Part shown: in pieces, positions 4,716 through 48,300 of the stretch
Layout: every line of letters begins with the position of its first letter
How positions within the stretch are numbered: the first letter of the stretch is position 1
Assembly (NCBI GenBank): GCA_040285825.1
Contig: JAUPSS010000007.1
Span: 1,388,501-1,452,500 of the forward strand
From: Eukaryota sp. TZLM1-RC
Lineage: Eukaryota > Protista > Metamonada: BaSk clade
Reading direction: 5' to 3'
DNA: 64,000 nucleotides
Position numbers and translations under genes: made by a program
Notes under the pieces: model-generated
The model's input: only the letters and a program-made list of their open reading frames with translations
What the model was told of the DNA's origin: nothing
Database searches by the model: none

Positions 4716-5820
4716 ATAATCATTTGTCATATCATGGATAAATATACCGTTCTGTTCAAACAAATCTTCACAATGATGATTGTTATACGTTTCAACGCGG
4801 CATTTAGTTGGTCTGCAATAGCATGGAGAACAAGTGAGCGATATGTAATTATAAGTTTGATGAATTGATAACATGGCAAATACAGTACACCACACGGAAT
4901 GGAATTGTTTGAATATCGGCAAATGTGCAATTGGACCAGATTTCAGGAAGAAAACATTTCATTCCAGAATTCTTTGACAATGACGGAACTAACTCTCCAT
5001 GATATTTCAAATCAAAGTATTCAAAAGTTCCACAAATAAATTGAATTCGTAAACATCTACGCCCCCAATTGAGTACTACGACATTTTGATCACCGATTAC
5101 AGAAGCCTCAATGTCAGGTCGATTAAACAACATTTTGTGCTCACTTCTTTTCCTTCATTCATCATTTAATTCATTGAATATTCATAACCTGGTTCAGTAG
5201 TCAGTGTTTTATTTCACATCAAAGCACAATTTTTTAACAATAGAGGAGACATAATGACAACTCGGAGATCTTTTACTCAATCACAATTTAATCATTTCTT
5301 TCTAGCAGCAGTTCATTTACGTGAATTTAAAAAAGTTTTATATAAAATAACTGATTCTGACAGCATTATTTACTGAAGCACATTGCAATTTTTCTCAAAG
5401 GTGAAATTTGTACCATATTTTATCAACTGAATTCACAATTATTCACTCTTCTTCTGCCATGTTGATTGAAAGCTTCTTCTTGATAGCCCGTGTGAAATAT
5501 TCTACAATGGGTGAAATATGATGAACAAATCATCGGCTTCAGCTGTTGTACCGGAAAGAGTTCAAGATTCTTCTGCACATGCAACAACATAATGTATCTT
5601 CAATATGATTGATAACACGTCTAAAGAGTAATGTCCTACCATCCTCCCAATGTGACCTTAACCTTGACCTGGATCATTTTCCTTTTATTCATTGAATGAA
5701 ATAGCTCAAGGGTTTTTTTCCGATTCCAGACAACAGCGATGTGAGAAGAAAGAATACATACCATTTTTGTGAATGCTGAATGAAGGAAATTCGTGAATTT
5801 TGTTTGAGATCTTACATGGA

Positions 5821-30535: not shown

Positions 30536-33500
30536 TTAAAGAAAAATTGTGAGAGAAGGACGATTAGATGCTATTTGGCGAAGTTTGGATTTGGTTGAAT
30601 TGCTGATGTTGTTGCCATAAAGATCCAATGTAGTCAGAGTAAAATTGCTCTCCAGAGCACGGGCGAGAGCACTAGCGCCTTCATCGGCAATGTTGTTGCC
30701 CCAAAGATTCAATTGAGCTAGACTAAAATTGCTCTCCAGAGCACGAGCGAGAGCACTAGCACCCTCATTGGCAATATTGTTTGCACGAACAACATTAATT
30801 CCCAGATCCAATTCAGTCAGAGTAAAATTGCTCTCCAGAGCACGGGCGAGAGCACTAGCGCCTTCATCGGCAATGTTGTTGCCCCAAAGATTCAATTGAG
30901 TTAGACTAAAATTGCTCTCCAGAGCACGGGCTAGAGCACTAGCGCCTTCATCGGTAATATTGTTTTCAGCAAGATCCAATGTAGTCAGAGTGGAATTGCT
31001 CTCCAGAGCACGAGCGAGAGCACTAGCGCCATCATTGGCAATGTTGTTCGATTGAAGATCCAATGTAGTCAGAGTGGAATTCCTCTCAAGAGCACGGGCG
31101 AGAGCACTAGCGCCTTCATTGGCAATGTTGTTCGATTGAAGATCCAATGTAGTCAGAGTGGAATTGCTCTCTAGAGCACGAGCGAGAGCACTAGCGCCAT
31201 CATTGGCAATGTTGTTCGATTGAAGATCCAATGTAGTCAGAGTGGAATTCCTCTCAAGAGCACGGGCGAGAGCACTAGCGCCATCATTGGCAATGTTGTT
31301 CGATTGAAGATCCAATGTAGTCAGAGTGGAATTGCTCCCCAGAGCACGGGCGAGAGCATTAGCACCATCATTGGCAATGTTGTTCGATTGAAGATCCAAT
31401 GTAGTCAGAGTGGAATTGCTCTCCAGAGCACGGGCGAGAGCACTAGCGCCATCATTGGCAATGTTGTTCGATTGAAGATCCAATGTAGTCAGAGTGGAAT
31501 TGCTCTCCAGAGCACGGGCGAGAGCACTAGCGCCATCATTGGCAATGTTGTTCGATTGAAGATCCAATGTAGTCAGAGTGGAATTCCTCTCCAGAGCACG
31601 GGCGAGTGCACTAGCGCCATCATTGGCAATGTTGTTCGATTGAAGATCCAATGTAGTCAGAGTGGAATTGCTCCCCAGAGCACGGGCAAGAGCACTAGCG
31701 CCATCATTGGCAATGTTGTTCGATTGAAGATCCAATGTAGTCAGAGTGGAATTCCTCTCCAGAGCACGGGCGAGAGCATTAGCACCATCATTGGCAATGT
31801 TGTTCGATTGAAGATCCAATGTAGTCAGAGTGGAATTCCTCTCCAGAGCACGGGCGAGAGCAAAAATGCTACAATAGGAATATTTAAAACACCAAGGAAA
31901 ACAAGATAATTCGACTAAATATTCGTTTTTGATTAGTTTAGTTGATTGAATTAGACCTTGATTATCAAGTTTTGTTGGAGATAGGGATGAACTCGACAGA
32001 TTGCGCAGAGGTCCAAGCAATTGAATAAACTTCAAAGAGGGAAAGTTTTGTTCAGTGATATTGGTATGAATTGCTTCATGAATTATCAATTCCTTAATGC
32101 TTGGTATTTCAATTTCAATATTGACAGGATCTCTCAACCAAACTTCCAATCTAGCAATGGAAAGAGGCAGTGGAATCTGTGCTTTTAAAACTCTTTCTGA
32201 AATAAAAGGACCACCAAATAACACCAGCTCTTTCAATGCTGTAAGATAGCTTAAATCAGTAACCTCAAAGTCATCTTTAAGCACCAACTTCACTAGTGAA
32301 GGGGGTAATTGTTCTATAATGAATGAACAATTAAGCTCCAGAAACTTGAGATTTGATAAATGTGTCAAGTTTAAGGATAGCCTTCTATTATGTCTTGACT
32401 TTGCACCAAGCTTAACAACCTCAACAGCTGGGAAAAATGACAAGAACTGTGGATCAAATTCATCTGTATCATAGTAAATATCAAGTGTTTTAAGTCTAGT
32501 ATTAGTAACACTGTAATCATTGAAAGCAAATGATAATTGCAATTGTAAATCCCAAACATAATCATTGAGATTTAAATGTTGTGGATTTTTCAAAAAATCA
32601 AAACCATTAATCACTTCTTTAGAAAATTTAGCCACTTTCTTGCTTATTGAACATTTGGTATAGTATCTGGCTTTTGTATAAGGATGATTACCAAACAATT
32701 TTTTCAAATATTGTAAATATTCAAAGTAAATTAATTTGATTAGACCACTAAACATGCTGTCCAAAGGTTGATTTGGATGATGAAAAGTTCCAAGTATTTC
32801 AGAGCCAAATACTTTGACAGGTTGAAGTCGATCAATCAAATCACCTGTACCTAATTGACCTTTATCGTTCCTTCCCCAGGCCCAAACAGTGTTTTTGTTG
32901 TAGGCAAAAAGGAAGTCATGTCCTAAGGAAACACATTCTATATTGGTGAAAACTTCTATGCATATTGGTGATTCAATATCTACAGAAATATTTTTAAATC
33001 TGCTCAACCTACCCCAAACAAAAACTTTACCATTAGAGTCAATGGCAGCATAAATATCATCATTGCCATTAATAGAGACAATATTACTCAATCCTAAAAC
33101 TTTTCTGGGTTTGTTATCGAAAGAATCATCATCTTCCTTGTCAAACCTCCAAACATCACCATTAGAGTCAATGACCAACAAAAAATTGTAATCAAACAAA
33201 AAAGAACTCAATGATAGTTTGGTTGGCAAAATGTACTTGCCAACTGGAATCTCGACAAATGAAATATACTGAGTACAATCAGAACCATCATTTGTAAGAA
33301 AGAAGAAGTGGGCATCTGAGTCAACTGCTACGATTGAGTCCAGATAGGCAGAAATAAAAACAATTTTATGCATGTTGATCCCTTGCATTGGCTTAAAAGT
33401 ACCATTACCAAATTGAATCAATTTTCCTTCTACAGTCAATCCAAATGATTTTGAGCTATTTTTGCTACTGCAAATTTCCTTGAAAAAATAAGGGCTGTTG

Positions 33501-34225
33501 ATAAGAGTAATTTCTGATAATAAATTGACTGCATGATTACTCCAACAATACAACAAGTCATCAGAAGAAAGGGCAAAGCAATGGTCCAAGTCAGCAGAAA
33601 TAGAAATTATATTGTTGATTGGAAGTTTGACTGGTTGTTTGACTATTGTGGGTCTATCAGGAAGAACTTGATCATCACCACACATCCCCCAAGCATAAAC
33701 TTCAGCAGAATAGGTGAGAAGCACTGAGCCAAAATCACTACATGAAATGGACTTAACCCCAACATGTCTATCCGATCGATCGGGGAAGTGTACTAGCTGT
33801 GGGTCACATGCAGAGGGGTGATTTAATGTGGGATCTGAGGAGGGATGTTGTAGAGGACATCCATTATGTGCATTTGAGTCGGGTTTTTGGTCGGGTTGCG
33901 GATCGGAAAAATGGGGAGCAGAGGTGGAATGCGGAGAACTACAGGGTAAGTCTGAAGGTAGACAGTGATCAACAGAGCAATGAGAGGGAGATCGTAATTC
34001 TTCATCAATAGTGGAGGAGAGTATCGTGGTAGTTGGGATCGATTGATGGGAAACATCGGAAGCAGCTTGTGAGAAGCAATTGTGGCGTCCCACTGGTTGA
34101 AATGCAACCAGGGCTTCAAGCTCGTGATTGAGAGGAGGGTCAGGACAACCTCGATTATTACTCTCCTTTCCATAACAAGAAATAATAGCGCCATCACCAG
34201 GCAAGCTATCTTGGTTTTGACGCAT
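30536..34225 (-). CDS. RCC1-like repeats + degenerate LRR region + C-terminal RI/NLRC3-type LRR array (about 1230 aa)
   Basis: VYAWG, GKVFVWG and VWAWGRNDKGQLGTGD RCC1 motifs; LPPSLVKLVL-type LRRs; 15 x 28-aa repeats LTTLDLQSNNIANDGASALARALE. Start moved from the TTG at 34297 to the ATG at 34225. Confidence 0.88.
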   Translation of the reverse strand: MRQNQDSLPGDGAIISCYGKESNNRGCPDPPLNHELEALVAFQPVGRHNCFSQAASDVSHQSIPTTTILSSTIDEELRSPSHCSVDHCLPSDLPCSSPHSTSAPHFSDPQPDQKPDSNAHNGCPLQHPSSDPTLNHPSACDPQLVHFPDRSDRHVGVKSISCSDFGSVLLTYSAEVYAWGMCGDDQVLPDRPTIVKQPVKLPINNIISISADLDHCFALSSDDLLYCWSNHAVNLLSEITLINSPYFFKEICSSKNSSKSFGLTVEGKLIQFGNGTFKPMQGINMHKIVFISAYLDSIVAVDSDAHFFFLTNDGSDCTQYISFVEIPVGKYILPTKLSLSSFLFDYNFLLVIDSNGDVWRFDKEDDDSFDNKPRKVLGLSNIVSINGNDDIYAAIDSNGKVFVWGRLSRFKNISVDIESPICIEVFTNIECVSLGHDFLFAYNKNTVWAWGRNDKGQLGTGDLIDRLQPVKVFGSEILGTFHHPNQPLDSMFSGLIKLIYFEYLQYLKKLFGNHPYTKARYYTKCSISKKVAKFSKEVINGFDFLKNPQHLNLNDYVWDLQLQLSFAFNDYSVTNTRLKTLDIYYDTDEFDPQFLSFFPAVEVVKLGAKSRHNRRLSLNLTHLSNLKFLELNCSFIIEQLPPSLVKLVLKDDFEVTDLSYLTALKELVLFGGPFISERVLKAQIPLPLSIARLEVWLRDPVNIEIEIPSIKELIIHEAIHTNITEQNFPSLKFIQLLGPLRNLSSSSLSPTKLDNQGLIQSTKLIKNEYLVELSCFPWCFKYSYCSIFALARALERNSTLTTLDLQSNNIANDGANALARALERNSTLTTLDLQSNNIANDGASALARALGSNSTLTTLDLQSNNIANDGASALARALERNSTLTTLDLQSNNIANDGASALARALESNSTLTTLDLQSNNIANDGASALARALESNSTLTTLDLQSNNIANDGANALARALGSNSTLTTLDLQSNNIANDGASALARALERNSTLTTLDLQSNNIANDGASALARALESNSTLTTLDLQSNNIANEGASALARALERNSTLTTLDLQSNNIANDGASALARALESNSTLTTLDLAENNITDEGASALARALESNFSLTQLNLWGNNIADEGASALARALESNFTLTELDLGINVVRANNIANEGASALARALESNFSLAQLNLWGNNIADEGASALARALESNFTLTTLDLYGNNISNSTKSKLRQIASNRPSLTIFL
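30600..31862 (-). repeat. 15 tandem 84-bp LRR-coding repeats (10 near-identical)
   Basis: Visible 84-bp period (GATCCAATGTAGTCAGAGTGGAATT..). Confidence 0.95.
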
Positions 34226-34845
34226 TACAGAGAGATTGAGATGAAGATGAAATGTACGGAAAAAATTTGGCAGCATTTGTGTAAAATTGTGAAGCAAAAT
34301 GCTGTTGATTGTTTTCTCCCTGTCATCTGGAGTAAATGTTTTCCAGACAATGTGCAGGAAATACCATCTAGAACACTAGTTAACTTTAGGTATTGTGTTG
34401 AAAAATTGCAACAAAAGTTAACAATAATGTTTGAAGGTTTGGATTTGAATGTTCGTCTTGGCTCGGCCAAAAAAGCTAATCCCACTTTCGGAAATTTTTT
34501 GCCAGATGCCCAAAACAGTTCCTCTTCCTGTTTAATTACTCAGATTCCTCTAATTTATGGTGTTCTTTTAAATGATACCGATTTGATTTCTACAATACGC
34601 CTTCATTGTTTTATTTGGCCCGATAACGCGCCCCATAATTTGATTTGTAAATGTGAATCAAAAATTTCTCCATATCATTTACTCAATTGTAAACAATTTA
34701 TTACTTTCCTATCAAAAGTTCATGATGCGGTAAGAGACCAACTCTATTGCATATCGAAATCACATAGAATTGTTTCCTACTTAGAACACTACTTACTTTC
34801 CTGGTTGGTTGATGAAGATACTTTGAATTCGTTTGGTCGAAATAG

Positions 34846-37511
34846 TGTTGCCGTTGGGCAACACCGTTATGGTGTTGCCTAAAAATGGTGTTATATCCTC
34901 GTCAGCGACTTTCATCTGTCAAAAAGCTTTTGGAAGGTCCAAAGTGGCGATGTAGTTGGCTTGACTTAGAAATTCCAAAACATCCGAAATTAATGGTAAG
35001 TTAGACTCAACTGGAATAGTAAGAGCGTTAACACCATTTTTACCGCTGAAATAGCCTGTCAACCTTGTTTACCGTAAATCTCGAATAAATTGCTCGTTAA
35101 TGCCAAGTTGTCCAGACCTGTTAAGAAGGCGTTAGCTACGGTCGACATTGGGAGTGTAAATACCCCTCTTGAAAATTCGAGTTCTTCAATTCTGGCCGAT
35201 GGGTCGGATATGTATGTGCACATCCTTAAGATGTCTCCAAAATTTTCCATATAAATCGCGTATTCTCTTTCTGTGTCGGCGGATGTACTTACCTTTTGCC
35301 AGTTGAATTTAGGTTTAAAAAGAGCTAATTTTGCGTCATGTAATGATGTGAACTGGCTTCTCCTACACAGTAGTAATAATATTTCGGCATCTGTAGGTTC
35401 CATGCTCACGAGTTGTTGTTGTTTCCAGAAAGATATAATTCTGGCATGGATGCAACCTGAGATTCCCTGGGGATTCACTGTTGATAAGACTGATCTAAAA
35501 AGATCATAAGAGTGAACAGGTATTCCTATCTTTTTATGAAGCTTTGATCTATTCTGTATTATTTTGGTGTTTCCATATTAATCAATTTGGACTGTAAATC
35601 GTCTATTTGTTGCTGAATGTGAGTTGAGTCTCCACTCTGTACTGAGATCAACTGAGCTAAACTGTTTATCATCTCCGTTATTTGTTCTTGTTGTTGAGGG
35701 GTGCTGGATTGTGGGATCTGTATTTGATCGACGTTTTGAGCTCCGTCTCTACCAGTTGTGTCCCAGAGGGCGAATTCCATGAGGAAATGTACTATTTTCA
35801 TCTGAGTTTCAGGGAATTCGAGTCTAGGGGGCTCGTGTATGGTTGCATGTTCTATGGCCTTAGTTCTGTAATGATAACCAACATGGGATTGTAAGTTTTG
35901 ATTTAATATGAGGCGTGGATCGAGTGGGTTTTGACTGTGTTGTTGTTGAGATCCAGTTGCCTGTAGATCTTGTAAACTAAGACCTTGTCCCGTTGTGTGT
36001 GTGGTGTCAACCGAGTATTGTGGAACTCCTTCCATCGGTTGTTAAGAATCACCAGGTTGGATTGTGAGGACGTCTAACCCTATTGGTCCTGTGTTTGGTT
36101 GGGGTAAGGTGTCTACATGCAGCTCCTGAACTGATTTCGATCCATCTTGGAAATTTAGTTGAATTGAGGGCCGGAAAGGCCTGATGCTCTTGAAGGGTGT
36201 ATTCTCTAAACCAATGATGGGGGTGAAGGTGAAAACCTTGTTCTGTAGCCATGAATCGCCTGTTTGGAGGTTCTTGTTATTAGGAGGAGACCTGTATGTA
36301 GAAATGACTGCTGTCGTCATGTTTATATCATCACGTCTATAAGTGACCCCTAATTCTTCATATATGAGCCTGAAAGGTTGTGAGGCTGGTCTCATTTCAA
36401 CGTAATTTGGTCTATGTGAGACTGGGTAGTATTCATGAACCTCTTTAACTACCGTATAGTCCTCTCCGGGGGCACTAAGCTCTTCGTAAATTTTGTCTAT
36501 ACCAACTCTGAACCAGTCAGGTAGGAGGCGGACGTTCTCGGGGCTATCTAGTTTCCCAGAGAAGTCGGTACCAACTTCCATTACCTCTAACCACCGAATT
36601 CTGAATCCTTTGTTATCGAGGGTGGCGTTATTCCCCAAAAAATCGTCACGTTCTGTGCGAGGTTTTGCCATTATATTTTTGTATTCTGTGTCGAGAGGCG
36701 AGAGTCTCATTCTTCGCTCTGCGGGCCGTGTGCTCAACTCATGGCTTTCTTTGTCTAAAAGGCCAATTGCCTCCTTCAACACTGAGGGTTGTATGGGGAT
36801 TTCCAGTGCTCCCGAAGTCGTCTCATTGAGGGTTTGTACGACGACAGTGTTTTCACACTGCGAATACATTGATTCGTCCAGGGACTCTATGAAGTCCGTT
36901 GGTTCCTTCTTTTCCATTTCTTCCTTACTCATAGTGAGTGCCAAGAGTAACTCTTGTATTTCTTGGGAGGGAGCTGGAGGTAGGTCGAAATTGACCTTTG
37001 GTGTCGTCGCGAGGGCGTTATTCGCCGACGAGTGGACATATTGGGCGCCTTGCGCCGTAACTTTACCTCGCTGATTTAAATGGACGTTTTGCGCCGAAAT
37101 TTGATTTTTGGTGGGGCTTAAACCCGAACCTGAAGCAGTGGAGGTGTCTAGCCTCGAATCTATTTGTTGGGGGGGAGTGGGGTGCATTACACCCGTACCC
37201 GTAACCTGAGGAGGAGTAAGGCCTTTTTCGCCCGAACTCGAATCCTTTTCTGGAGTTGCCATTGAACTCGAAGAAGATTTGTTGTTGAGAGGAGGGTTAG
37301 AAGGGTCTCCTCTGACAGATGTCTGACATACCCCAGACATCTTTTGGGTGTCTACAGCGCTGTTGCTGTTTGCTGTTAATGGTGCCTGATACGCACAATA
37401 ATTAATGTTGCCGTTGGGCATTATGCTAGCTGGATGTAAAGAGAGTTAAGATAAAGTTAATTTTATTAAATGTCATTCTATATAAAGGTACTCACTAGTG
37501 AGATACCTACA
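34846..37511 (-). mobile_element. Internally deleted, gag-only Ty3/Gypsy element; 106-bp 5' LTR (37406-37511), only 15 bp of the 3' LTR, 4-bp TSD ATAG
   Basis: TG..CA ends; ATAG at 34842-34845 and 37512-37515; TGTTGCCGTTGGGCA at 34846 and 37406. IPVHSYDLFRS and LCRRSQFTSLHDA align with KPIHEWDLFRS and ILRRTQFTRLDQA in ORF 60752-62467. Confidence 0.85.
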
Positions 37512-37845
37512 ATAGAGGTGAATTAGTGCTTGAAGGTCTTGAAGGTTCGATCCACTGATGTATGTAATGATTCTTTTATTCCAATGGCTCAATCAAAATA
37601 TAGGGACCCCATAATTGTTTCCGAATAGACAAAAATTGACAAATACAACGCTAAATTGTTATCCTTGAATGCAGAATCGCATACTCATTATGTCCTCTGT
37701 CCATTTGCAGTTTCCCTTCTGGCATGCTTGGACCTCTCGCTTTGTCTTTTCTGAATGATTTTGTTGAAATTGTGAAACAACGTACTTCAAGAGTTTTTGA
37801 TAAGAGTTTTTGGCAAAACTGAATTGTATTTTCAATTTTCAGCAG

Positions 37846-38024
37846 TCAGGTAGCTTCCCTGCACCGGCACCGTGACGCCGCTGCCCTGCTGGGAATGCCC
37901 GACGACGAGGTGGGCACCTGCCCCAGGCGAGGCGGTAACGATCTGGGTGTGGTCGACCCCGAACCGGAGCTTGATGCTACGCGCTACCTGCCACCTGGAC
38001 TGGAGCTGTGGAGGCCACGGCCGT
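37846..38024. other. About 180-bp very GC-rich foreign-looking insert
   Basis: Roughly two-thirds GC in an AT-rich background; absent from the family D copy at about 27950-27975 (AAAGCAGTTGTTCCC). Confidence 0.8.
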
Positions 38025-38789
38025 GTTGTTCCCTTACTATTTTCAGCTTTGTTATCTCTTGAACGTGTTTATGAAAGAAAAACCTCCAGTTAATTCTTTT
38101 TGACTGATTTGGGTTATGAAGATATGGTATTTTAACCTGGTCGTATAGTTTGTTTTTCATTGGAATAAATGATAATTAAGGGAAAAATTAATTACATTTT
38201 TAAATTTATCAAATAATTGTGTCATTTTGCTTCAGTGATAATGTAAACTCAAGGATTATTTTTGCCAAAAATGAATCAAATGTGACATTTGCATTTACTG
38301 AATTGTTGTATTTGAAAAAAAATTAGTCAGTAGCCAAAAATTGAAACATTCTACCGGCTTTTGTTGGGTTATGTCGACTTAGTTCCATAAACAGATAAAC
38401 AATAAATACACAGAGAGTTTATGGAAGCAGTTAAGAAAATAAAAAAATAAAATAAAATAAAAAAAATAAAAAAAAACAACAAATTTAAACTAACGATGAC
38501 GTGATGTCACGTCAACCTTCCAAATCGGGAAAGCACGTTTAGCCTAAGCTAACACTTTGATTTCAATATAAAACGGTTTTTTATATTATTCTCAACACTA
38601 TATTTTTTCTATTCCTCATTGTCAACCCCAAGATAATATCTGTGATATTGTTTAAAATTTTCAGCACCATCAATTTTACATTTTTCGTAAATTGTATTTT
38701 TCATCAAGTTCAATAGACACACAATTTCTTCCCACATGATAATTGTTAATCGTTTTCTTATGTTTTCACTTTCCAACTAGTCATCAGAC

Positions 38790-39580
38790 ATCCAGAACTG
38801 CAGTAGTTTAATATCTCAGCAACCAAGGCCATTTGGTCTTCATTTAACAAACGAAGCTTGGAAACAAAACATGCGGTTGAGATTGGGGCTGTATCCAAGT
38901 GGTCTTTTGGATAATTCTGTTTGTATTTGTAACGAAAAACCTACTGTCGATTTCCGTCATATTGTTAGTTGTAAGAAATTTCTTCAATATCGGTCAGTTT
39001 TTCATAATGCCGTTCGTGATGTGACAAATGAGATGTGCAAGTGTTACAATTTTAGTTGCAAAGTAGAACCGTTGTTGAAGCATTATAGCGATAATAATCT
39101 GTTTAATTCACGTCGAGGTGATTGAATTGCTCCTTTTGTGGATTCCTCTAAAGTTGTTGTTGATTTTACTACAGTTGATCCCTTTGCATTTGTTTATCGT
39201 GATGATGTTTTAGTCAGTGCCAATGGTCATTTAAACAAGGCTGAAGATCGTAAAAGAGATAAATATACTGAGATATTAAATGATTTAAATAAGAATCTTT
39301 ACTCGAAGTTTTTGTTTGTTCCTTTTGCCTTTTCGATTTTTGGCAACATTCGACAGTCCGCCGTGAATTTTATCAATGATTTTGGTAATTTTTGTCGTTC
39401 AAGTGGTAAGAATTTCGCAGGGAATTTATGGAAGAATCAAATCATTTTCGCTTTGTACAGAAGTGTTCCCAAGTACTTAAGTCTAATGATGTCCAAGCTG
39501 TATAAGGATTCATCAAGATTTGGCGTGGAGAATTTTAATTCTTATGGGTTTTGGTTTATTTTGATATGTTTTGTTTCTTT
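38790..39580 (+). mobile_element. CRE family E 3' part (CCHC + RLE)
   Basis: MRLRLGL..CICNEK..HIVSC..HNAVRD, RRGD, VVDF, AEDRKRDKY, FVPFAFSIFG. Confidence 0.88.
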
Positions 39581-39589
39581 GTTTTTTCA

Positions 39590-39922
39590 ATTATTCCAGA
39601 AAAGAATTTTTTAAATTTGAAGTACACTCTTCGAACATTACAGAAACGATTGACTGGAATGTATGAAAAAGATCTTTATAATAATGTATGCACCTCGGCT
39701 GTTTTAAATCAAGATCTTCACTCATTGTTATTGGAAAAGGGGTGTTTGTGAAAACAAGTCATCAGATTTTTCACTTTTTGTAACCATTGTACCACGAAGA
39801 TTTGGATTGTGTGCAACTAGTGAAGCAATTGTAAAAAAATGAGATTATATTTGAATATCACAATTAAGCAGCTATTATCAAAAGAAAAATGTTGTTGTTC
39901 GAATTCCCCTCAACTCACTTTG
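39590..39922 (+). mobile_element. Internal fragment of CRE family B
   Basis: LNLKYTLRTLQKRLTGMYEKDLY matches 8678 onward. Confidence 0.85.
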
Positions 39923-40764
39923 GAACTCAATGCCTTAGAGACCGCAGACGCTTTAATTTGAAACGTTTGTGCAATTTTTGGCATACCTATGTTAATTCAT
40001 AGTGATAATGGTCCTGAGTTCGCCAATGAGACTTTTGAGATAGTGTGTAATAGATAAGCTATTGAAATGAGTAACTCAATAACCCACTACTCTGAAAGTA
40101 ATGGACTCGTAGAACGAAAACAGAGAGACGTTCTACAATGCTTGAGGAAATTATTAATAGATTTTAATGATTATGGAAATTGGTCTACTTATGTACCCAT
40201 ATCCCAACTACTAATAAATTCCACTAAAAGCAGAAAGACAGGTTTTACCCCATACGAACTAATGTTTGGATCTTCGATTAGTCCAAGATCGGACCCTGCA
40301 AACATATTAGGAAACTTATCAAAATTTGATTCCAAAATACCTGTATTAGACGATATTAAAATGAAAAATATTCGTCTGCAAAAAAAAGGGAAGAAGCAGA
40401 GCATCAACAATCATTAAATACTCCGACTTCAGTAGTCGATACTAATTCGCGTTTTATAGTATTTAATATTGGTGACTATGTCCTTCGTAAAACCAAACAA
40501 AATTATAAATTGCATGGATCTTGGAACGGACCCTTTTTAGTAATAGACCATCCTTCCAACTCTACTTTATTATTGAAGAATGTTACCACTGGCACCGAAT
40601 TAAAGGCTGCTAAGAAAGATTGCAAAATCTATAACGCTGAAAATCCACAGGATATCGAATTTCTTAAGGCAGTCGCATCAGGCGATGCTGAGAGCCATGT
40701 TATAGAGAAAATCCTCTCAGAATATAATTCTGACTCAGGTAGTTTTTGTACTGTTCAATGGTTT
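39923..40764 (+). mobile_element. Degenerate Ty3/Gypsy integrase core, GPF/Y motif and first half of a chromodomain
   Basis: CAIFGIPMLIHSDNGPEFAN, SNGLVERKQRD, TGFTPYELMFG, KLHGSWNGPF, HVIEKIL..CTVQWF; homologous to 56688-57516. Confidence 0.88.
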
Positions 40765-41971
40765 GCCTCCCCACTGTCCTCACATGATAAAATTACTTTT
40801 TCATCAAAGGAAATTAGTGAGCTTTTTCTCTTCAATCTTAAAATTTCACAATACTTACTCACTTTCTTTTCTCACATGCATTGCTGGAAGAAATTTAGAA
40901 TAATACCTTTAGCTTTCATAAAGGTTCTAAATTTCATGAAATACCTTCACATGTTTTCCACTCTGTGAAAAAATTTCCACTTATTGAAGGATCATCTTCC
41001 AAAACAAAGTTTATCAGAAATACATGTCTGAAACGAGTGCTCAAACAATGTCCTTACCAAAAATTCAATATCAACAGAAAAAGTTTGAAAAATAAATTTA
41101 AAAATTATTTATTGAAAACTAATGGTATTGAACTGCTTTTGACCTTTAAAGGTAAAAATAATGACTCAGAAAACACAGATGAGCTGGATGAACCACCAAA
41201 AAAAAGAAGATCAAAAAATGAAATGAAAAGTGACCCTGATGCCAACAAAACCAGAGAAACACAGTTGAAGGGCACTAAAAAATGCCCCTTCGAAGACGTA
41301 GACATCCAGTCAAAATTTTACCTGAAAGGCACCTTATTGGTGTTGATCTGGGCCAATCAAGATTATGTGGTTACTTCTTACATGATAATCAATGTGGAGT
41401 TATCCCTTGTCCAACTGGCAGAAGGTACATGACAAAACCTTCATACAGTAAACACTCTTCCAACCAATATTCCGTTCAAAATTTCAACCAATATTTGAAC
41501 CATTGGAATTTGGTCAGGAGAAAAGTGTATTTGGAAAGTAATCGCCAGAAATAGAAAATAATTAAATTTGGTAACCGAAGACGAAAAGAGAGACGGTTCA
41601 GAGAGACTCTCAACAAATTTCAAAGGCTGGCTGGACATCCTGATAAACTCTATCTTGCTGTGGGTTCTGCTAATTTCCCTTCTCATTGCCGAAAAGCCAA
41701 TCCATATGGATCAGCAAGAGCTTTCAGAAAATCGTTGTGTTATCAAAAGGACGTGAAGCACATGTCAACCAGTGAATTTAATACAAGCAAACTGTCAAGT
41801 TGTTGCATGGCCGAGAATATTCAAGCAGGATCATGGCAGATGTGTATTTGTACTGAATGTCAAATAGAATATGACCCAGATATTTCTGCTGCAAAAAATA
41901 TTCAAATTAAGAAGAAAGCGGAATTGTGGCTGGAAAGATACATTTGCCCAGATGCTCTGTTGAGGAGATGA
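40765..41971 (+). pseudogene. Fanzor (Fanzor1-like, eukaryotic TnpB-family RuvC nuclease), 5'-truncated and degenerate
   Basis: KKFRIIPL and LKTNGIELLLTF N-lobe motifs; RuvC-I IGVDLG; basic helix KFGNRRRKERRF; LAVGSANF; RuvC-II SEFNTSKLSSCC; CTEC; RuvC-III YDPDISAAKNI. 41282-41971 is one frame with a single TAG at 41552-41554. Confidence 0.82.
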
Positions 41972-42309
41972 ATAGGGAACGTGAGCATACAGAAACTAAA
42001 ACTTTTGAGACCGATCTACAAATGCCTTAGTAGCATTTGGTAGATCCACTTAGATACATCAAGTCGCGAGGCTTTGTTCTGTGAAAGCAGTAGGTGTATT
42101 TAAGTGAGGTAGCCCATTGATGAAGATCATGATTGTCTTTGTCAAATGACGCTACATGTCTCTTACAGCCTGTGAGTAGACATTGAGAAAGTTGAAAACA
42201 GGAGTGAATTTCACAGGGGAATGCTAGTTAGAATTCCGAACGCTCGGCCGAACTAGTTTTTGTTAAACACAGTTTTGTTTAAAGATGTTTTCCCAAATCC
42301 CTATTTCAA
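41970..42309 (+). ncRNA. Highly structured ~340-nt RNA, candidate Fanzor omega-RNA scaffold
   Basis: At least eight nested helices with G-U pairs and GCGA/GAAA tetraloops, starting at the Fanzor stop codon (pairings listed in findings). Confidence 0.65.
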
Positions 42310-42371
42310 CTACTACAATAGATTTCATTGTTTAAAAATCTGTATTCATACATAAAACCATATATGAATCT

Positions 42372-45300
42372 ATGAATGAACAACCTAGGTATCTTACTCA
42401 AGATGTCATCCTGCGTGCTACCAAGAAGACACCAGCTGAGTTAAAATCAGTTACAAGATTAACACTTCAACGACAACACTCAGACCCACATCACCTTAAC
42501 CACATAGAGAACTTACATCTCCTTCCCAATTTGAGAGAGCTAATCTTAACAAACCATGCTATAACTTCTTTCCAGGGCATATCCACAAATTTGCGCCTGG
42601 TAGATTTGTCTTCAAACAGAATCACTTCCTTTTCTCAGTTCTCCGCTCTCTCTTCAGTTGAGATTTTAATCCTTACAGACAATGCTATATCTACAATACC
42701 TCCTCAAATACGACAGCTGCAGTCTCTTAGAGAGCTTCGTCTCAATGGAAACCCTATTACTGCTATCCAAGACATTTCTAATCTAGCTCCTTGTCGCTCC
42801 CTCTCCCTTCTTTCCCTGAGCAGAACTACTGTTGCTGAACTTCCACACTATCGCCCTTTTTGCATCTATGCAATTCCATCTCTTTCTCATCTTGATGCTA
42901 CCTTCGTCTCTGAACAGGAGAGATCTCAAGCAAGAACCAGGTTTGAGGGTAAGGAAAAGAAAGCGTTGGAGCTGAAATTAAGCGATCAAGAGAAGGAAAT
43001 GCAGAGACTAGAAACTGAAAACCAGAAAAATCAAGGTAAAATTGCCAAGCTAGAGCAGTATGTTATTAATATCAAGAAAAAAGCTTCTTTAATAGTAGAC
43101 GAAAGAAATGCTCTGGCCAAACGCTTTGAGGAGCAGAATGAAGTATTAAAAGAAAGAGGAAGGGAGCTCACAAGGGCTCTCGGAAGAATTTCTCAGTTGG
43201 AAAACCAAATAGCTGCTTTTAGTGATGATGACGACGTGGAGTTTAGTCAATTTATTAGGAGTTCACAGGGGAAAAGTTTTGTTAATAAAGGAAGGAAGTC
43301 AATAGAACTCCAGTGTGAATTGGGGTCAGCAGGATTGGGAGGTGAAAATTTTGATGATGACGTGGCGAGATTAGAAGGGATCGTGTCAGATTTGGAAAAG
43401 AGGAATCATGAGCTTTTGAACGTCAGTCAAGAAAATCAACGGTTTAAAGCAATTATAAATGATTTGGAACAAAAGATTGGCGAAAAAGATGAAGAAATTG
43501 CAAGTTTACAAGCTGAATCATTAGAATTGGAAAATTCTCAACAATTAAATGCCCAAAATTGTTCTAAATTCGAGTCAATAATTGATGAAAAGTCTGCTCT
43601 GTTGGCTGAAAAGGAACAAGAAAATGCTAAATTATTGGAAGAATTACACTCAGTTTCTCAAGAAAAGCAGCAGTTAGAAGAATTGCTTCAGCAAAACAGT
43701 TCGGCTGACTTTAATTTTTCCAAGAATCTTTCACCTCAAAATTTAATGAAGTTTTTGACTGATTTTGCTTTAAAAAACTGAAAATTCTGTTGACACCCTT
43801 CGACAAAAAATGGATGATTTGTATTTAAGTAACTTGAGTCAAAAAGAATTAGAAAGTAGAGTAAATGTATTACAAAATGAAGTTGACAATGCTCAAGAAT
43901 TTTCTCAAAATATTACAGATTTAATGGTTGAAATTAGAAAAAATAATGGTATTCCTAGTAGAATTTTAACTGAAATTGAAATTTTAAAGAGTTTAATTCC
44001 AAATAATCCCGAAGGAATTGAAGATCAGAGTACTCTGCTGGCTGAAAAGGAACAAGAAAATGCTAAATTATTGGAAGAATTACACTCAGTTTCTCAAGAA
44101 AAACAGGAATTTGCAGATAATTTATCTAAATTTGAAGCAATTATAAATGATTTGGAGCAAAAAATTGGCGAAAAAGATGAAGAAATTGCAACTTTACAAG
44201 CTGAATCATTAGAATTGGAAAATTCTCAACAATTGAATGTCCAAAATTGTTCTAAATTCGAGTCAATAATTGATGAAAAGTCTGCTCTGTTGGCTGAAAA
44301 GGAACAAGAAAATGCTAAATTATTGGAAGAATTACACTCAGTTTCTCAAGAAAAACAGCAGTTAGAAGAATTGCTTCAGCAAAACAGTTCAGCTGACTTT
44401 AATTTTTCCAAGAATCTTTCACCTCAAAATTTAATGAAGTTTTTGACTGATTTTGCTTTAAAAACTGAAAATTCTGTTGACACCCTTCGACAAAAAATGG
44501 ATGATTTGTATTTAAGTAACTTGAGTCAAAAAGAATTAGAAAGTAGAGTAAATGTATTACAAAATGAAGTTGACAATGCTCAAGAATTTTCTCAAAATAT
44601 TACAGATTTAATGGTTGAAATTAGAAAAAATAATGGTATTCCTAGTAGAATTTTAACTGAAATTGAAATTTTAAAGAGTTTAATTCCAAATAATCCCGAA
44701 GGAATTGAAGATCAGAGTACTCTGCTGGCTGAAAAGGAACAAGAAAATGCTAAATTATTGGAAGAATTACACTCAGTTTCTCAAGAAAAACAGGAATTTG
44801 CAGATAATTTATCTAAATTTGAAGCAATTATAAATGATTTGGAGCAAAAAATTGGCGAAAAAGATGAAGAAATTGCAAGTTTACAAGCTGAATCATTAGA
44901 ATTGGAAAATTCTCAACAATTGAATGTCCAAAATTGTTCTAAATTCGAGTCAATAATTGATGAAAAGTCTGCTCTGTTGGCTGAAAAGGAACAAGAAAAT
45001 GCTAAATTATTGGAAGAATTACACTCAGTTTCTCAAGAAAAGCAGCAGTTAGAAGAATTGCTTCAGCAAAACAGTTCGGCTGACTTTAATTTTTCCAAGA
45101 ATCTTTCACCTCAAAATTTAATGAAGTTTTTGACTGATTTTGCTTTAAAAACTGAAAATTCTGTTGACACCCTTCGACAAAAAATGGATGATTTGTATTT
45201 AAGTAACTTGAGTCAAAAAGAATTAGAAAGTAGAGTAAATGTATTACAAAATGAAGTTGACAATGCTCAAGAATTTTCTCAAAATATTACAGATTTAATG

Positions 45301-48300
45301 GTTGAAATTAGAAAAAAATAATGGTATTCCTAGTAGAATTTTAACTGAAATTGAAATTTTAAAGAGTTTAATTCCAAATAATCCCGAAGGAATTGAAGAT
45401 CAGAGTACTCTGCTGGCTGAAAAGGAACAAGAAAATGCTAAATTATTGGAAGAATTACACTCAGTTTCTCAAGAAAAACAGCAATTTGCAGATAATTTAT
45501 TTAAATTTGAAGCAATTATAAATGATTTGGAACAAAAGATTGGCGAAAAAGATCAAGAAATTGCAACTTTACAAGCTGAATCATTAGAATTGGAAAATTC
45601 TCAACAATTAAATGCCCAAAATTGTTCTAAATTCGAGTCAATAATTGATGAAAAGTCTGCTCTGTTGGCTGAAAAGGAACAAGAAAATGCTAAATTATTG
45701 GAAGAATTACACTCAGTTTCTCAAGAAAAGCAGCAGTTAGAAGAATTGCTTCAGCAAAACAGTTCAGCTGACTTTAATTTTTCCAAGAATCTTTCACCTC
45801 AAAATTTAATGAAGTTTTTGACTGATTTTGCTTTAAAAACTGAAAATTCTGTTGACACCCTTCGACAAAAAATGGACGATTTGTATTTAAGTAACTTGAG
45901 TCAAAAAGAATTAGAAAGTAGATTAAATGTATTACAAAATGAAGTTGACAATGCTCAAGAATTTTCTCAAAATATTACAGATTTAATGGTTGAAATTAGA
46001 AAAAATAATGGTATTCCTAGTAGAATTTTAACTGAAATTGAAATTTTAAAGAGTTTAATTCCAAATAATCCCCAAGGAATTGAAGATCAGAGTGCTCTGC
46101 TAGCTGAAAAGGAACAAGAAAATGCTAAATTATTGGAAGAATTACACTCAGTTTCTCAAGAAAAACAGGAATTTGCAGATAATTTATCCAAATTTGAAGC
46201 AATCATAAATGATTTGGAACAAAAAATTGGCGAAAAAGATGAAGAAATTGCAACTTTACAAGCTGAATCAGTAGAATTGGAAAATTCTCAACAATTGAAT
46301 GCCCAAAATTGTTCTAAATTTGAGGCAATAATTGATGAAAAGTCTGCTCTGTTGGCTGAAAAGGAACAAGAAAATGCTAAATTATTGGAAGAAATGCACG
46401 CAGTTTCTCGAGAAAACAGGAATTTGCAGATAATTTATCTAAATTTGAAGCAATTATAAATGATTTGGAGCAAAAAAATTGGCGAAAAAGATGAAGAAAT
46501 TGCAAGTTTACAAGCTGAATCATTAGAATTGAAAATTCTCAACAATTGAATGCCCAAAATTGTTCTAAATTTGAGTCAATAATTGATGAAAAGTCTGCTC
46601 TGTTGGCTGAAAAGGAACAAGAAAAATGCTAAATTATTGGAAGAAATGCACGCAGTTTCTCGAGAAAAAACAGGAATTTGCAGATAATTTATCTAAATTT
46701 GAAGCAATTATAAATGATTTGGAGCAAAAAATTGGCGAAAAAGATGAAGAAATTGCAAGTTTACAAGCTGAATCATTAGAATTGGAAAATTCTCAACAAT
46801 TGAATGCCCAAAATTGTTCTAAATTTGAGTCAATAATTGATGAAAAGTCTGCTCTGTTGGCTGAAAAGGAACAAGAAAATGCTAAATTATTGGAAGAAAT
46901 GCACGCAGTTTCTCGAGAAAAACAGGAATTTGCAGATAATTTATCTAAATTTGAAGCAATTATAAATGATTTGGAGCAAAAAATTGGCGAAAAAGATGAA
47001 GAAATTGCAAGTTTACAAGCTGAATCATTAGAATTGGAAAATTCTCAACAATTGAATGCCCAAAATTGTTCTAAATTTGAGTCAATAATTGATGAAAAGT
47101 CTGCTCTGTTGGCTGAAAAGGAACAAGAAAATGCTAAATTATTGGAAGAAATGCACGCAGTTTCTCGAGAAAAACAGGAATTTGCAGATAATTTATCCAA
47201 ATTTGAAGCAATCATAAATGATTTGGAACAAAAAATTGGCGAAAAAGATGAAGAAATTGCAAGTTTACAAGCTGAATCATTAGAATTGGAAAATTCTCAA
47301 CAATTGAATGCCCAAAATTGTTCTAAATTCGAGTCGATAATTGATGAAAAGTCTGCTCTGTTGGCTGAAAAGGAACAAGAAAATGCTAAATTATTGGAAG
47401 AAATGCACGCAGTTTCTCAAGAAAAACAGGAATTTGCAGATAATTTATCTAAATTTGAAGCAATTATAAATGATTTGGAGCAAAAAATTGGCGAAAAAGA
47501 TGAAGAAATTGCAAGTTTACAAGCTGAATCATTAGAATTGGAAAATTCTCAACAATTGAATGCCCAAAATTGTTCTAAATTTGAGTCAATAATTGATGAA
47601 AAGTCTGCTCCTGTTGGCTGAAAAGGAACAAGAAAATGCTAAATTATTGGAAGAAATGCACGCAGTTTCTCAAGAAAACAGGAATTTGCAGATAATTTAT
47701 CTAAATTTGAAGCAATTATAAATGATTTGGAGCAAAAATTGGCGAAAAAGATGAAGAAATTGCAAGTTTACAAGCTGAATCATTAGAATTGGAAAATTCT
47801 CAACAATTGAATGCCCAAAATTGTTCTAAATTTGAGTCAATAATTGATGAAAAAGTCTGCTCTGTTGGCTGAAAAGGAACAAGAAAATGCTAAATTATTG
47901 GAAGAAATGCACGCAGTTTCTCGAGAAAAACAGGAATTTGCAGATAATTTATCTAAATTTGAAGCAATTATAAATGATTTGGAGCAAAAAATTGGCGAAA
48001 AAGATGAAGAAATTGCAAGTTTACAAGCTGAATCATTAGAATTGGAAAATTCTCAACAATTGAATGCCCAAAATTGTTCTAAATTTGAGTCAATAATTGA
48101 TGAAAAGTCTGCTCTGTTGGCTGAAAAGGAACAAGAAAATGCTAAATTATTGGAAGAAATGCACGCAGTTTCTCGAGAAAAACAGGAATTTGCAGATAAT
48201 TTATCTAAATTTGAAGCAATTATAAATGATTTGGAGCAAAAATTGGCGAAAAAGATGAAGAAATTGCAAGTTTACAAGCTGAATCATTAGAATTGGAAAA

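What the first reader, a model, noticed from the sequence alone, without database searches (positions are those of the whole stretch)
40765..42309. Fanzor (eukaryotic RNA-guided nuclease) locus hidden in fragmented ORFs, with adjacent guide-RNA candidate
Seen: four small ORFs join into one protein with KKFRIIPL, KTNGIELLLTF, IGVDLG, a basic helix, LAVGSANF, SEFNTSKLSSCC, CTEC and YDPDISAAKNI. From IGVDLG to the stop is one frame with a single TAG (probably TGG). Known: the D / ExxTS / DxxAAxNI layout with a zinc finger is the split RuvC of TnpB/Fanzor, and the omega-RNA lies at or just past the ORF 3' end. Inference: a Fanzor1-like OMEGA system in this protist. This copy is dead, but all three catalytic acidic residues remain, so intact copies may exist elsewhere.
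Basis: partly seen in the sequence, partly recalled or inferred. Interest (0 to 1): 0.9.

Follow-up and report, generated by a model that had tools for sequence, protein, structure and literature searches.

The report
Dead Fanzor copy with RNA tail
This is a broken, front-truncated copy of a Fanzor element (a eukaryotic transposon-borne RNA-guided nuclease gene of the TnpB type) with its conserved structured RNA tail, in the soda-lake flagellate Skoliomonas litria; the gene family is new and very divergent, but this copy itself is dead.

Summary
Window 40764-42224 is one copy (95% identical to others) of a roughly 2.4-kb repeat of Skoliomonas litria TZLM1-RC. It encodes a TnpB/Fanzor-type nuclease. 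Pfam Cas12f1-like_TNB scores above its cut-off. The best PDB profile hits are Cas12m, Cas12f and TranC. The published Fanzor active-site geometry is present: D-x-G, 140 residues, the alternative Glu 6 residues before the zinc finger, and Asp 6 residues after it.

The window copy is dead:
- It is cut at 40764 against a retroelement remnant.
- It has two 1-bp deletions, one 3-bp deletion and a TAG that is TGG in five paralogues.
- Its right end is degenerate.

The three acidic residues remain. One uninterrupted 509-aa ORF exists elsewhere in the genome, though it carries an internal deletion.

The roughly 255-nt tail after the stop is 75% identical to the sister species GEM-RC1. Third codon positions are only 41% identical. 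The tail keeps a multi-helix fold with five compensatory pairs, so an omegaRNA scaffold is the best reading. No RNA run was listed, so expression is untested. Both structure predictions failed.

In a third species (RCL), all four loci carry an EXO1-like nuclease module fused or adjacent upstream of the Fanzor gene.

The scan's first readers had already noted many Fanzor loci elsewhere in this genome.

The parts
39923..40763 (+). Retroelement remnant (integrase C-terminus and chromodomain-like end) that abuts the Fanzor fragment. It is not part of the element. No LTR lies between the two.
   Evidence: ORFs 40067-40417 and 40510-40968 carry integrase and chromodomain-type motifs. This is a motif reading from general knowledge; Pfam gave no hit. 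The region upstream is a mosaic of retroelement fragments. Homology to the other Fanzor copies starts only at 40764.
40764..40915 (+). First surviving ORF segment (frame 1), starting mid-protein at ASPLSSHDKITF and running to KKFRIIPLA. The 5' truncation point of the copy is 40763/40764.
   Evidence: It aligns with L007 from position 5318, which is residue 107 of the 509-aa P0010. L001, L007 and L008 extend further 5'.
40916..41276 (+). Second ORF segment (frame 3): WED-like region with the T-N-G motif at 41118-41126 and a basic NLS-like stretch (PPKKRRSK). It is entered through a 1-bp deletion after 40915 and contains an in-frame 3-bp deletion at 41197.
   Evidence: Translation. Indels relative to L007.
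41277..41551 (+). Third ORF segment (frame 2), entered through a 1-bp deletion in an A-run (A6 here, A7 in L001 and L007). RuvC-I IGVDLG lies at 41336-41353, with the catalytic Asp codon at 41345-41347.
41552..41554 (+). Premature stop TAG (TGG, Trp, in the paralogues).
   Evidence: L001, L005, L006, L007 and L008 all have TGG. Protein sequences.
41555..41971 (+). Fourth ORF segment (frame 2). It holds a basic helix and LAVGSANF. The alternative RuvC-II Glu is at 41774-41776. The zinc finger is SSCC at 41795-41806 and CTEC at 41849-41860. The RuvC-III Asp is at 41879-41881, within DPDISAAKNI (Arg changed to Pro relative to paralogues). The stop TGA is at 41969-41971.
   Evidence: Pfam PF07282, E 6.1e-6, 26.7 bits. 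NCBIfam guided_TnpB, E 3.8e-4. PDB Cas12m4a alignment. Motif geometry.
42003..42168 (+). Core of the conserved structured non-coding tail (candidate omegaRNA/reRNA scaffold, helices 1-6).
   Evidence: Covariance model R1 gives 201.7 bits here and 143 bits in GEM-RC1 locus L009. The consensus fold has 79 pairs, 98.9% of pair cells paired and 5 compensatory pairs, against 0.9 in shuffles. The fold z-score is -4.6.
42169..42224 (+). Distal part of the tail, including the palindrome GTGAATTTCAC at 42204-42214.
   Evidence: Alignments.
42225..42241 (+). Degenerate or lost right terminus. Intact copies end here with ATGATAAGTGAAATTCACAGT; the window has a diverged stretch with a 4-nt deletion.
42242..42371 (+). 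Unique flank up to the ATG of the downstream LRR/coiled-coil gene (42372-43781, same strand). It is not part of the element. In an intact copy the first roughly 15-20 nt of flank would be the guide.
   Evidence: Homology to all other copies is lost here. Pfam LRR_9 for the downstream ORF.

Best explanation
Window 40764-42224(-42241) is a decayed copy of a roughly 2.4-kb single-gene mobile element of Skoliomonas litria. An intact element would carry four things in order: a short 5' leader; an ORF of roughly 650 aa for a TnpB-superfamily RuvC nuclease of the Fanzor type; a roughly 255-nt structured non-coding tail that begins at the stop codon; and a fixed right terminus ending in a palindrome.

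By analogy with characterised TnpB and Fanzor systems, the tail would be transcribed as the scaffold of an omegaRNA (reRNA). Its 3' extension into the flanking DNA would be the guide. The protein-RNA complex would cut DNA that matches that guide next to a short motif.

Shown here: homology, motif geometry, copy structure, the lesions, and conservation and covariation of the tail. Inferred: RNA expression, RNA-protein binding and guided cleavage.

The window copy cannot make the protein. It lost about 245 N-terminal residues at a junction with a retroelement remnant. It has two frameshifts, a premature TAG, an Arg-to-Pro change next to the RuvC-III Asp, and a damaged right terminus.
For: Organism: proteins of this family are named 'Eukaryota sp. 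TZLM1-RC'. That strain is Skoliomonas litria (PMC11316075, PMC11603281).

Repeat family:
- At least 25 annotated fragments lie on at least 8 contigs.
- There is 95-98% DNA identity between the window and L001, L006, L007 and L008, which have unrelated flanks.
- Four S. litria copies and GEM-RC1 share a precise right end. L007 and L008 share a left end.

Nuclease homology:
- PF07282 passes its gathering score.
- NCBIfam TnpB models match.
- PDB profile hits are Cas12m4a (7.5e-5), Cas12f and TranC.
- Weak tblastn hits fall on annotated TnpB genes.
- hhalign against TnpB gives 85% probability, E 6e-6.
- The nearest ESM Atlas clusters are PF07282 proteins of giant viruses, score 0.97.

Fingerprint: D-(L/P)-G, then 140-149 aa, then E, 6 aa, zinc knuckle, 14 aa, CxxC, 6 aa, D. 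This fits the ranges published for Fanzors (PMC10711439; PMC10530073).

Tail:
- It is 75.5% identical between S. litria and GEM-RC1. Coding DNA is 62.5% identical, third codon positions 41.5%, and the 5' leader is unalignable.
- 79 pairs are predicted and 98.9% of pair cells are paired. There are 5 compensatory pairs against 0.9 expected, reached in 0 of 500 shuffles.

Lesions.
Against: - No fold-level confirmation. Both AlphaFold2 runs gave unusable models (pLDDT 32 and 41), so RuvC-I, WED and REC are assigned by motif and spacing only.
- Sequence similarity to known TnpB/Cas12 proteins is confined to the C-terminal roughly 90-140 residues.
- RuvC-I reads DLG in S. litria and GEM-RC1, not the DPG that is near-universal in Fanzors. 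DPG is present in the RCL relatives.
- The first zinc knuckle is S-x-C-C rather than CxxC.
- No RNA run could be listed, so transcription of the tail is untested.
- Covariation rests on only two diverged lineages, and the structure was derived from the same alignment.
- Rfam has no match.
- The RCL relatives lack a detectable counterpart of the tail.
- No transposase and no clear TIR or TSD were found, so the mode of mobility is unknown.
Confidence: 0.82

Rival explanations
1. The conserved, hairpin-rich tail is a DNA-level cis element, not a guide-RNA scaffold. It could be a transposon end recognised as single-stranded hairpins, as in IS200/IS605 or Helitron 3' ends, or simply a 3' UTR.
For: The element ends in two palindromes (GTGAATTTCAC and GTGAAATTCAC) 2-3 nt from a fixed terminus. 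Compensatory changes preserve hairpins in DNA as well as in RNA. No expression data exist. The RCL relatives have no such tail.
Against: About 220 nt in at least 6 helices are conserved, well beyond the short terminal signals such transposases need. The position directly after the ORF and running to the right end is where characterised TnpB/Fanzor reRNAs lie (PMC10711439, PMC10530073). The left end and leader are not conserved between species, which is unexpected if end recognition drove the conservation. The two roles are not exclusive: in Fanzor1 the terminal repeat is part of the reRNA scaffold.
Confidence: 0.13
2. The frameshifts are assembly errors of a long-read genome, so the window copy is less decayed than it looks.
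For: One 1-bp deletion lies in an A-run (A6 against A7). The assemblies are long-read based (reference list and methods of PMC11316075). Every RCL copy also shows single frame breaks.
Against: The 5' truncation at a junction with unrelated DNA, the TAG substitution, the 3-bp deletion, the Arg-to-Pro change and the degenerate right end are not homopolymer errors. Most other S. litria copies are independently broken in different places.
Confidence: 0.1
3. The gene is not a Fanzor-lineage nuclease. It would be another protein that only shares a TnpB-like zinc-ribbon C-terminus: a different transposase, or a domesticated host factor without RNA guidance.
For: Significant similarity to TnpB/Cas12 covers only the C-terminal region. 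The family is isolated: the exhaustive search of 1.84 billion representatives found only 9 hits. RuvC-I is DLG and the first zinc knuckle is atypical. In RCL it is joined to an EXO1-like module.
Against: The full D-E-D spacing fits the Fanzor regular expression ranges exactly. The RCL orthologues have DPG. It is multi-copy with shared ends and mostly decayed copies, which is transposon behaviour rather than that of a host gene. The nearest language-model clusters are PF07282 proteins. It carries a conserved structured tail.
Confidence: 0.05

Closest known systems
Fanzor1 (for example SpuFz1 of Spizellomyces punctatus and SfAV Fanzor1; PMC10432273, PMC10711439)
   Same: - A eukaryotic, transposon-borne TnpB homologue.
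- The alternative RuvC-II Glu lies six residues before the zinc finger, and the Asp six residues after it.
- Protein size is about 650 aa, with a long N-terminal helical region.
- It is a single-gene non-autonomous element with no IS607 TnpA.
- A T/S-D/N-G motif sits in the putative WED region.
- A multi-stem RNA follows the ORF and runs to the right terminus.
- It has an internal basic NLS-like stretch.
   Different: - No detectable sequence similarity outside the C-terminal RuvC-II/ZnF/RuvC-III block.
- RuvC-I is DLG in S. litria and GEM-RC1.
- The first zinc knuckle is S-x-C-C.
- No clear TIR or TSD.
- The REC2 hallmark could not be checked.
- The host is a metamonad, a group not mentioned in the main text of the three main Fanzor surveys I read.
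Fanzor2, and the DPG/Ealt 'pro-Fanzor' IS607 TnpBs (PMC10711439, PMC11832414)
   Same: The Ealt arrangement, with DPG in the RCL orthologues. NCBIfam IS607_TnpB is among the weak hits. The nearest ESM Atlas clusters are giant-virus PF07282 proteins.
   Different: No IS607 serine recombinase is nearby. The protein is larger than typical Fanzor2. No pseudoknot analysis was done.
IS200/IS605 TnpB (ISDra2) with its omegaRNA, and the miniature Cas12f/Cas12m
   Same: Best PDB and profile matches. The split RuvC with a zinc ribbon. The guide RNA is derived from the element's right end.
   Different: The canonical RuvC-II Glu position is not clearly kept. One HMM alignment puts an E/D/Q of H-P-(E/D)-K-L-Y there, and another puts Gly there. 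The host is eukaryotic, no TnpA is present, and the N-terminus is much longer.

Membership tests
TnpB superfamily (Pfam Cas12f1-like_TNB / NCBIfam guided_TnpB) | The C-terminal RuvC-II / zinc-ribbon / RuvC-III block matches the family profile above the curated cut-off. | tested here: met
   PF07282 scores against the 26.3-bit cut-off: window piece 26.7, P0006 28.5, P0007 32.6, P0010 28.6, P0011 28.3. NCBIfam TnpB models match only locally, far below their full-length cut-offs. hhalign against three annotated TnpBs gives E 6e-6.
Fanzor lineage (fingerprint of PMC10711439) | The alternative RuvC-II glutamate lies six residues upstream of the zinc finger. | tested here: met
   E, then FNTSK(L/M/F), then the zinc knuckle, in the window (Glu codon 41774-41776) and in all relatives that have this region. 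The definition is quoted.
Fanzor lineage (fingerprint of PMC10711439) | The RuvC-I motif is D-P-G (near-exclusive in Fanzors; D-hydrophobic-G in ordinary TnpB). | tested here: inconclusive
   The family straddles the feature. The window and all S. litria and GEM-RC1 copies read DLG, so it is not met there. Both RCL subfamilies (P0006, P0007) read DPG, so it is met there.
Fanzor lineage (fingerprint of PMC10711439) | Spacing: D-x-G, 120-160 aa, E. Then CxxC, 12-18 aa, CxxC, 4-8 aa, D. | tested here: met
   The spacings are 140 aa (window, P0010, P0011) or 149 aa (P0007), then 14 aa between knuckles, then 6 aa to the Asp. One departure: the first knuckle is S-S-C-C, not CxxC, so the literal published regular expression does not match.
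Fanzor lineage | Encoded in a eukaryotic nuclear genome within a mobile element. | tested here: met
   The copies lie on Mb-scale contigs between ordinary eukaryotic genes. They are dispersed with shared ends and different flanks.
Fanzor / OMEGA system | A non-coding RNA (omegaRNA/reRNA) at the 3' end of the ORF runs to the right end of the element, with the guide in the flank. | tested here: inconclusive
   A conserved structured tail sits in the expected place, with cross-species conservation well above third codon positions and 5 compensatory pairs. No RNA run could be listed. Rfam has no match.
Fanzor / OMEGA system | RNA-guided, TAM-dependent DNA cleavage. | not testable with these tools
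   This needs biochemistry with an intact family member.
Fanzor1 subtype | A REC2 domain made of a pair of kinked helices, and a remodelled WED domain (PMC10711439). | tested here: inconclusive
   Both AlphaFold2 models were unusable (pLDDT 32.4 and 40.7). Two long helices are predicted between RuvC-I and RuvC-II, but at low confidence.
Fanzor1 subtype | A characteristic T-D-G motif in the WED domain. | tested here: inconclusive
   The window and S. litria read T-N-G (41118-41126). P0007 reads S-D-G and P0006 S-N-G, at one aligned position before a beta-hairpin-like stretch. Equivalence to the Fanzor1 motif was not verified structurally.
Fanzor2 subtype | Association with an IS607-type TnpA serine recombinase. 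| tested here: not met
   The 2.4-kb element holds only the one ORF. No recombinase gene appears among the called neighbours of the nine family loci whose gene tables I received.

The most novel reading that the evidence does not exclude
In the sister species Skoliomonas sp. TZLM3-RCL this Fanzor family exists as a multi-copy unit. In it, an EXO1-type 5' nuclease domain (XPG_N/XPG_I) is translationally fused to the N-terminus of the Fanzor. That would be a two-nuclease, RNA-guided protein that could couple guided cutting to 5' resection or flap processing. The S. litria element of this window would then be the form that lacks this module, or that lost it.
Probability: 0.35. Interest if true: 0.8.

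Novelty: new member of a known kind. Interest (0 to 1): 0.5.

Why it matters
Fanzors are the eukaryotic RNA-guided nucleases and are of interest for genome editing and for transposon biology. This family has several points of interest.
- It is very remote from described Fanzors. Only skoliomonad proteins and one metagenomic fragment were found among 1.84 billion representatives.
- It sits in a newly described, deep-branching metamonad lineage.
- It straddles the DPG/DLG boundary that is used to tell Fanzors from TnpBs.
- It has an unusually long RNA tail whose conservation between species gives a ready scaffold prediction.

The EXO1-Fanzor linkage in the sister species, if it is a real fusion protein, would be a new architecture for an RNA-guided nuclease. 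The window copy itself has no function; its value is as a pointer to the family.

Tried and rejected
- Structure prediction. Two AlphaFold2 jobs were run, on P0007 with 10 rows and on P0010:135-509 with 13 rows. They gave pLDDT 32 and 41, so no fold search was run. The family is too shallow for co-evolution signal.
- Single-sequence PDB search of P0006 found nothing. The RuvC-I piece alone gave only chance hits.
- RNA evidence. The look-up of sequencing runs listed no RNA run.
- Rfam found no match in 38000-44000.
- Covariance model R1 of the tail found no counterpart next to the RCL genes, even with filters off. The model is effectively single-lineage, so this is weak negative evidence.
No Fanzor1/Fanzor2 tree could be built because I had no reference Fanzor sequences from a tool.
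- The missing N-terminal part and an EXO1 module were sought elsewhere in the window and in the S. litria and GEM-RC1 loci. Neither was found.
- Rejected idea: that the retroelement and the Fanzor form one meaningful gene. The in-frame run 40510-40968 and the spliced model P0001 join two truncated, unrelated elements.
- Left-end, TAM and TSD analysis was abandoned. Only two full left ends were available.

Full report
**What is in the window**

The frame holding IGVDLG runs to the TGA at 41969-41971. It is interrupted only by TAG at 41552-41554.

The C-terminal piece (41555-41968) matches Pfam PF07282 (Cas12f1-like TNB, formerly the OrfB zinc ribbon) at E 6.1e-6. Its score of 26.7 bits is just above the 26.3-bit gathering score. 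It also matches NCBIfam guided_TnpB locally and Cas12m4a in the PDB.

**Organism and family**

An exhaustive HMMER search of 1.84 billion representative proteins with that piece found only nine proteins. A profile search of the 5.8-billion set found 25. All but one came from three isolates named Eukaryota sp. TZLM1-RC, TZLM3-RCL and GEM-RC1. These are Skoliomonas litria and two other skoliomonads, free-living anaerobic metamonads from soda lakes (PMC11316075, PMC11603281).

The window belongs to S. litria. The annotated protein P0001 matches the window's retroelement and Fanzor pieces at 98% identity, which suggests a spliced gene model of this locus or a near-identical copy. That model looks like a prediction artefact.

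**Copy structure**

I fetched the loci of the paralogues (L001, L004-L008).
- Window 40764-42224 is 94-95% identical to L001, L007 and L008, and about 96% to L006 over the 866 nt it shares.
- The flanks of these loci are unrelated to one another.
- L007 and L008 share a left end 181 bp before the ATG.
- L001, L006, L007, L008 and the GEM-RC1 locus L009 share a right end...GTGAAATTCACAGT.
- The full element is about 2.4 kb (L008 4820-7222).
- L007 carries an uninterrupted 509-aa ORF (P0010). It lacks about 425 bp that are present in L008 and GEM-RC1.
- Nearly all other S. litria copies are fragments broken in different places.

**Lesions of the window copy**

Homology begins abruptly at 40764, inside the ORF. 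That point corresponds to residue 107 of P0010, or roughly residue 245 of the full-length form. It lies directly after a retroelement integrase/chromodomain remnant, with no LTR between them. Both elements are therefore truncated at this junction.

Relative to L007 the window shows the following:
- a 1-bp deletion after 40915;
- a 3-bp deletion at 41197;
- a 1-bp deletion in an A-run after 41276;
- TAG in place of TGG at 41552-41554;
- an Arg-to-Pro change in D-R-D-ISAAKNI;
- a diverged terminus after 42224.

The three acidic codons survive at 41345-41347, 41774-41776 and 41879-41881.

**Is it a Fanzor?**

Homology to the TnpB superfamily is solid for the C-terminal 90-140 residues.
- The PDB profile hits are Cas12m4a, Cas12f, TranC and a 'transposase' chain.
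- The weak tblastn hits in plasmids fall almost entirely on annotated TnpB genes.
- hhalign against three such TnpBs gives E 6e-6.

PMC10711439 gives an explicit Fanzor fingerprint. It requires DPG at RuvC-I and a glutamate six residues before the zinc finger (Ealt) instead of about 50 residues before it. It sets spacings of 120-160 aa, 12-18 aa and 4-8 aa. PMC10530073 describes the same rearranged site and shows the alternative Glu is essential.

The family fits the geometry exactly: 140-149 aa, then E plus 6 aa, then 14 aa, then 6 aa. There are two departures. The first knuckle is S-S-C-C. RuvC-I is DLG in S. litria and GEM-RC1 but DPG in both RCL subfamilies.

The residue at the canonical position is uncertain. 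One alignment puts the E/D of H-P-(E/D)-K-L-Y there and another puts a Gly there.

The following fit Fanzor1 but were not verified:
- a size of about 650 aa;
- no IS607 TnpA;
- a T-N-G / S-D-G motif in the putative WED region;
- two long predicted helices between RuvC-I and RuvC-II.

Both AlphaFold2 runs failed. The nearest ESM Atlas clusters by language-model features are 625-804-aa giant-virus proteins carrying PF07282.

**The RNA candidate**

Within S. litria, the tail from the stop to 42224 is 97.3% identical to L007, against 95.4% for the ORF.

Between S. litria and GEM-RC1 the contrast is much stronger:

| Region | Identity |
|---|---|
| Protein | 61% |
| Coding DNA | 62.5% |
| Third codon positions | 41.5% |
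| 3' tail (194 of 257 aligned positions) | 75.5% |
| 5' leader | not alignable |

The tail has long blocks above 90%. By my own arithmetic the difference between the tail and third positions is about 8.7 standard errors.

RNAalifold predicts nine helices with 79 pairs. The count of structure pairs controls bear this out.
- 98.9% of pair cells are standard pairs.
- The GEM-RC1 sequence carries five double-sided compensatory changes and eleven one-sided compatible ones, with few breaks.
- Shuffles give 0.9 compensatory pairs, and 0 of 500 shuffles reach five.
- Slid controls pair at only 35-41%.

The window tail folds with a z-score of -4.6. Covariance model R1 finds the tail once in the window, at 42003-42168, and once per intact locus.

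This is the position and behaviour expected of an omegaRNA/reRNA scaffold. The guide would start after ...CACAGT.

Caveats: only two diverged lineages are available, and the structure was derived from the same alignment. No RNA run was listed. A DNA-level role for the terminal palindromes cannot be excluded.

**Beyond the window**

In Skoliomonas sp. RCL the family looks different. All four loci fetched carry an EXO1-like nuclease module directly upstream on the same strand. L002 and L014 are 96.5% identical over 3.2 kb; L003 and L013 are 99% identical over 4.6 kb. The module contains XPG_N and XPG_I and matches the human EXO1 catalytic domain at E 4e-43.

In L003 a single ORF runs from XPG_I into the region homologous to the N-terminus of the GEM-RC1 Fanzor (E 4e-29). 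In L013 and L014 the two parts share a frame.

Those units end at most 41-79 bp after the stop and have no R1-like tail.

S. litria and GEM-RC1 copies begin with a Met at the Fanzor N-terminus and have no EXO1 module. No paper in the library contains both 'Fanzor' and 'XPG'. Each RCL copy has at least one frame break in the assembly, so whether a fusion protein is made remains open.

**Verdict**

This is a dead, 5'-truncated member of a new, highly divergent Fanzor family with a conserved omegaRNA-like tail. The kind of system is known, while the family, its host lineage and the EXO1 linkage in the sister species are new.

The scan's first readers had already flagged many Fanzor loci on other pieces of this genome. 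I used those notes only as leads.

Noticed in passing
L002:3304-6980, L003:1799-5149, L013:4998-8349, L014:4758-7955 (Skoliomonas sp. TZLM3-RCL): Every RCL locus of this Fanzor family has an EXO1-like nuclease module (XPG_N/XPG_I) fused or directly adjacent upstream on the same strand. There are two subfamilies, each with two near-identical dispersed copies. I found no description of a Fanzor joined to an XPG/EXO1 nuclease in the searched literature.
   Followed up: partly
window 42241-42372; L001, L006, L004, L002, L014 right ends: The element's right end often lies a short distance (3-131 bp) upstream of the start of a same-strand annotated gene. A + strand gene follows in 8 of 11 loci. The putative guide would then match promoter or 5'-UTR DNA of the neighbour. 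This echoes an earlier first-reader note. No statistics were done.
   Followed up: partly
window 40510-40968 and protein P0001: A retroelement integrase/chromodomain remnant reads in frame into the Fanzor fragment. The public annotation has a spliced 184-aa gene model (P0001) joining retroelement and Fanzor pieces. It is most likely a prediction artefact over two truncated elements.
   Followed up: partly
window 5938-8157 (also L001:1-898, L008:7245-7598, L004:8907-9246): A multi-copy retroelement (RVT_1, E 2.7e-23 on ORF 5938-7086). A fragment of it also sits 23 bp beyond the Fanzor right end in L008.
   Followed up: partly
window 43443-47753: The gene downstream of the Fanzor remnant (LRR plus coiled coil, ORF 42372-43781 and following ORFs) runs into long tandem repeats of 687-688 bp and 252 bp at 97-100% identity.
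   Followed up: no
window 30537-31943: A 14-copy tandem array of an 84-bp unit lies inside a 1253-aa ORF on the minus strand (30536-34297). That ORF sits between long inverted repeats (28000-28844 against 34325-34850 and 37549-37808).
   Followed up: no
L001:6323-6338: One paralogue has a 16-nt insertion (CTAAAAAACAGCTAAA) between the two terminal palindromes of the tail, and a third copy of the palindrome just beyond the right end. Origin unexplained.
   Followed up: no
L004:8250-8918: A 222-aa gene 1.6 kb downstream of a Fanzor fragment has a precomputed hit to PF26935 (DUF8286). The same family marks the giant-virus clusters nearest to P0010 in the ESM Atlas. The Pfam copy available here does not hold that model.
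   Followed up: partly
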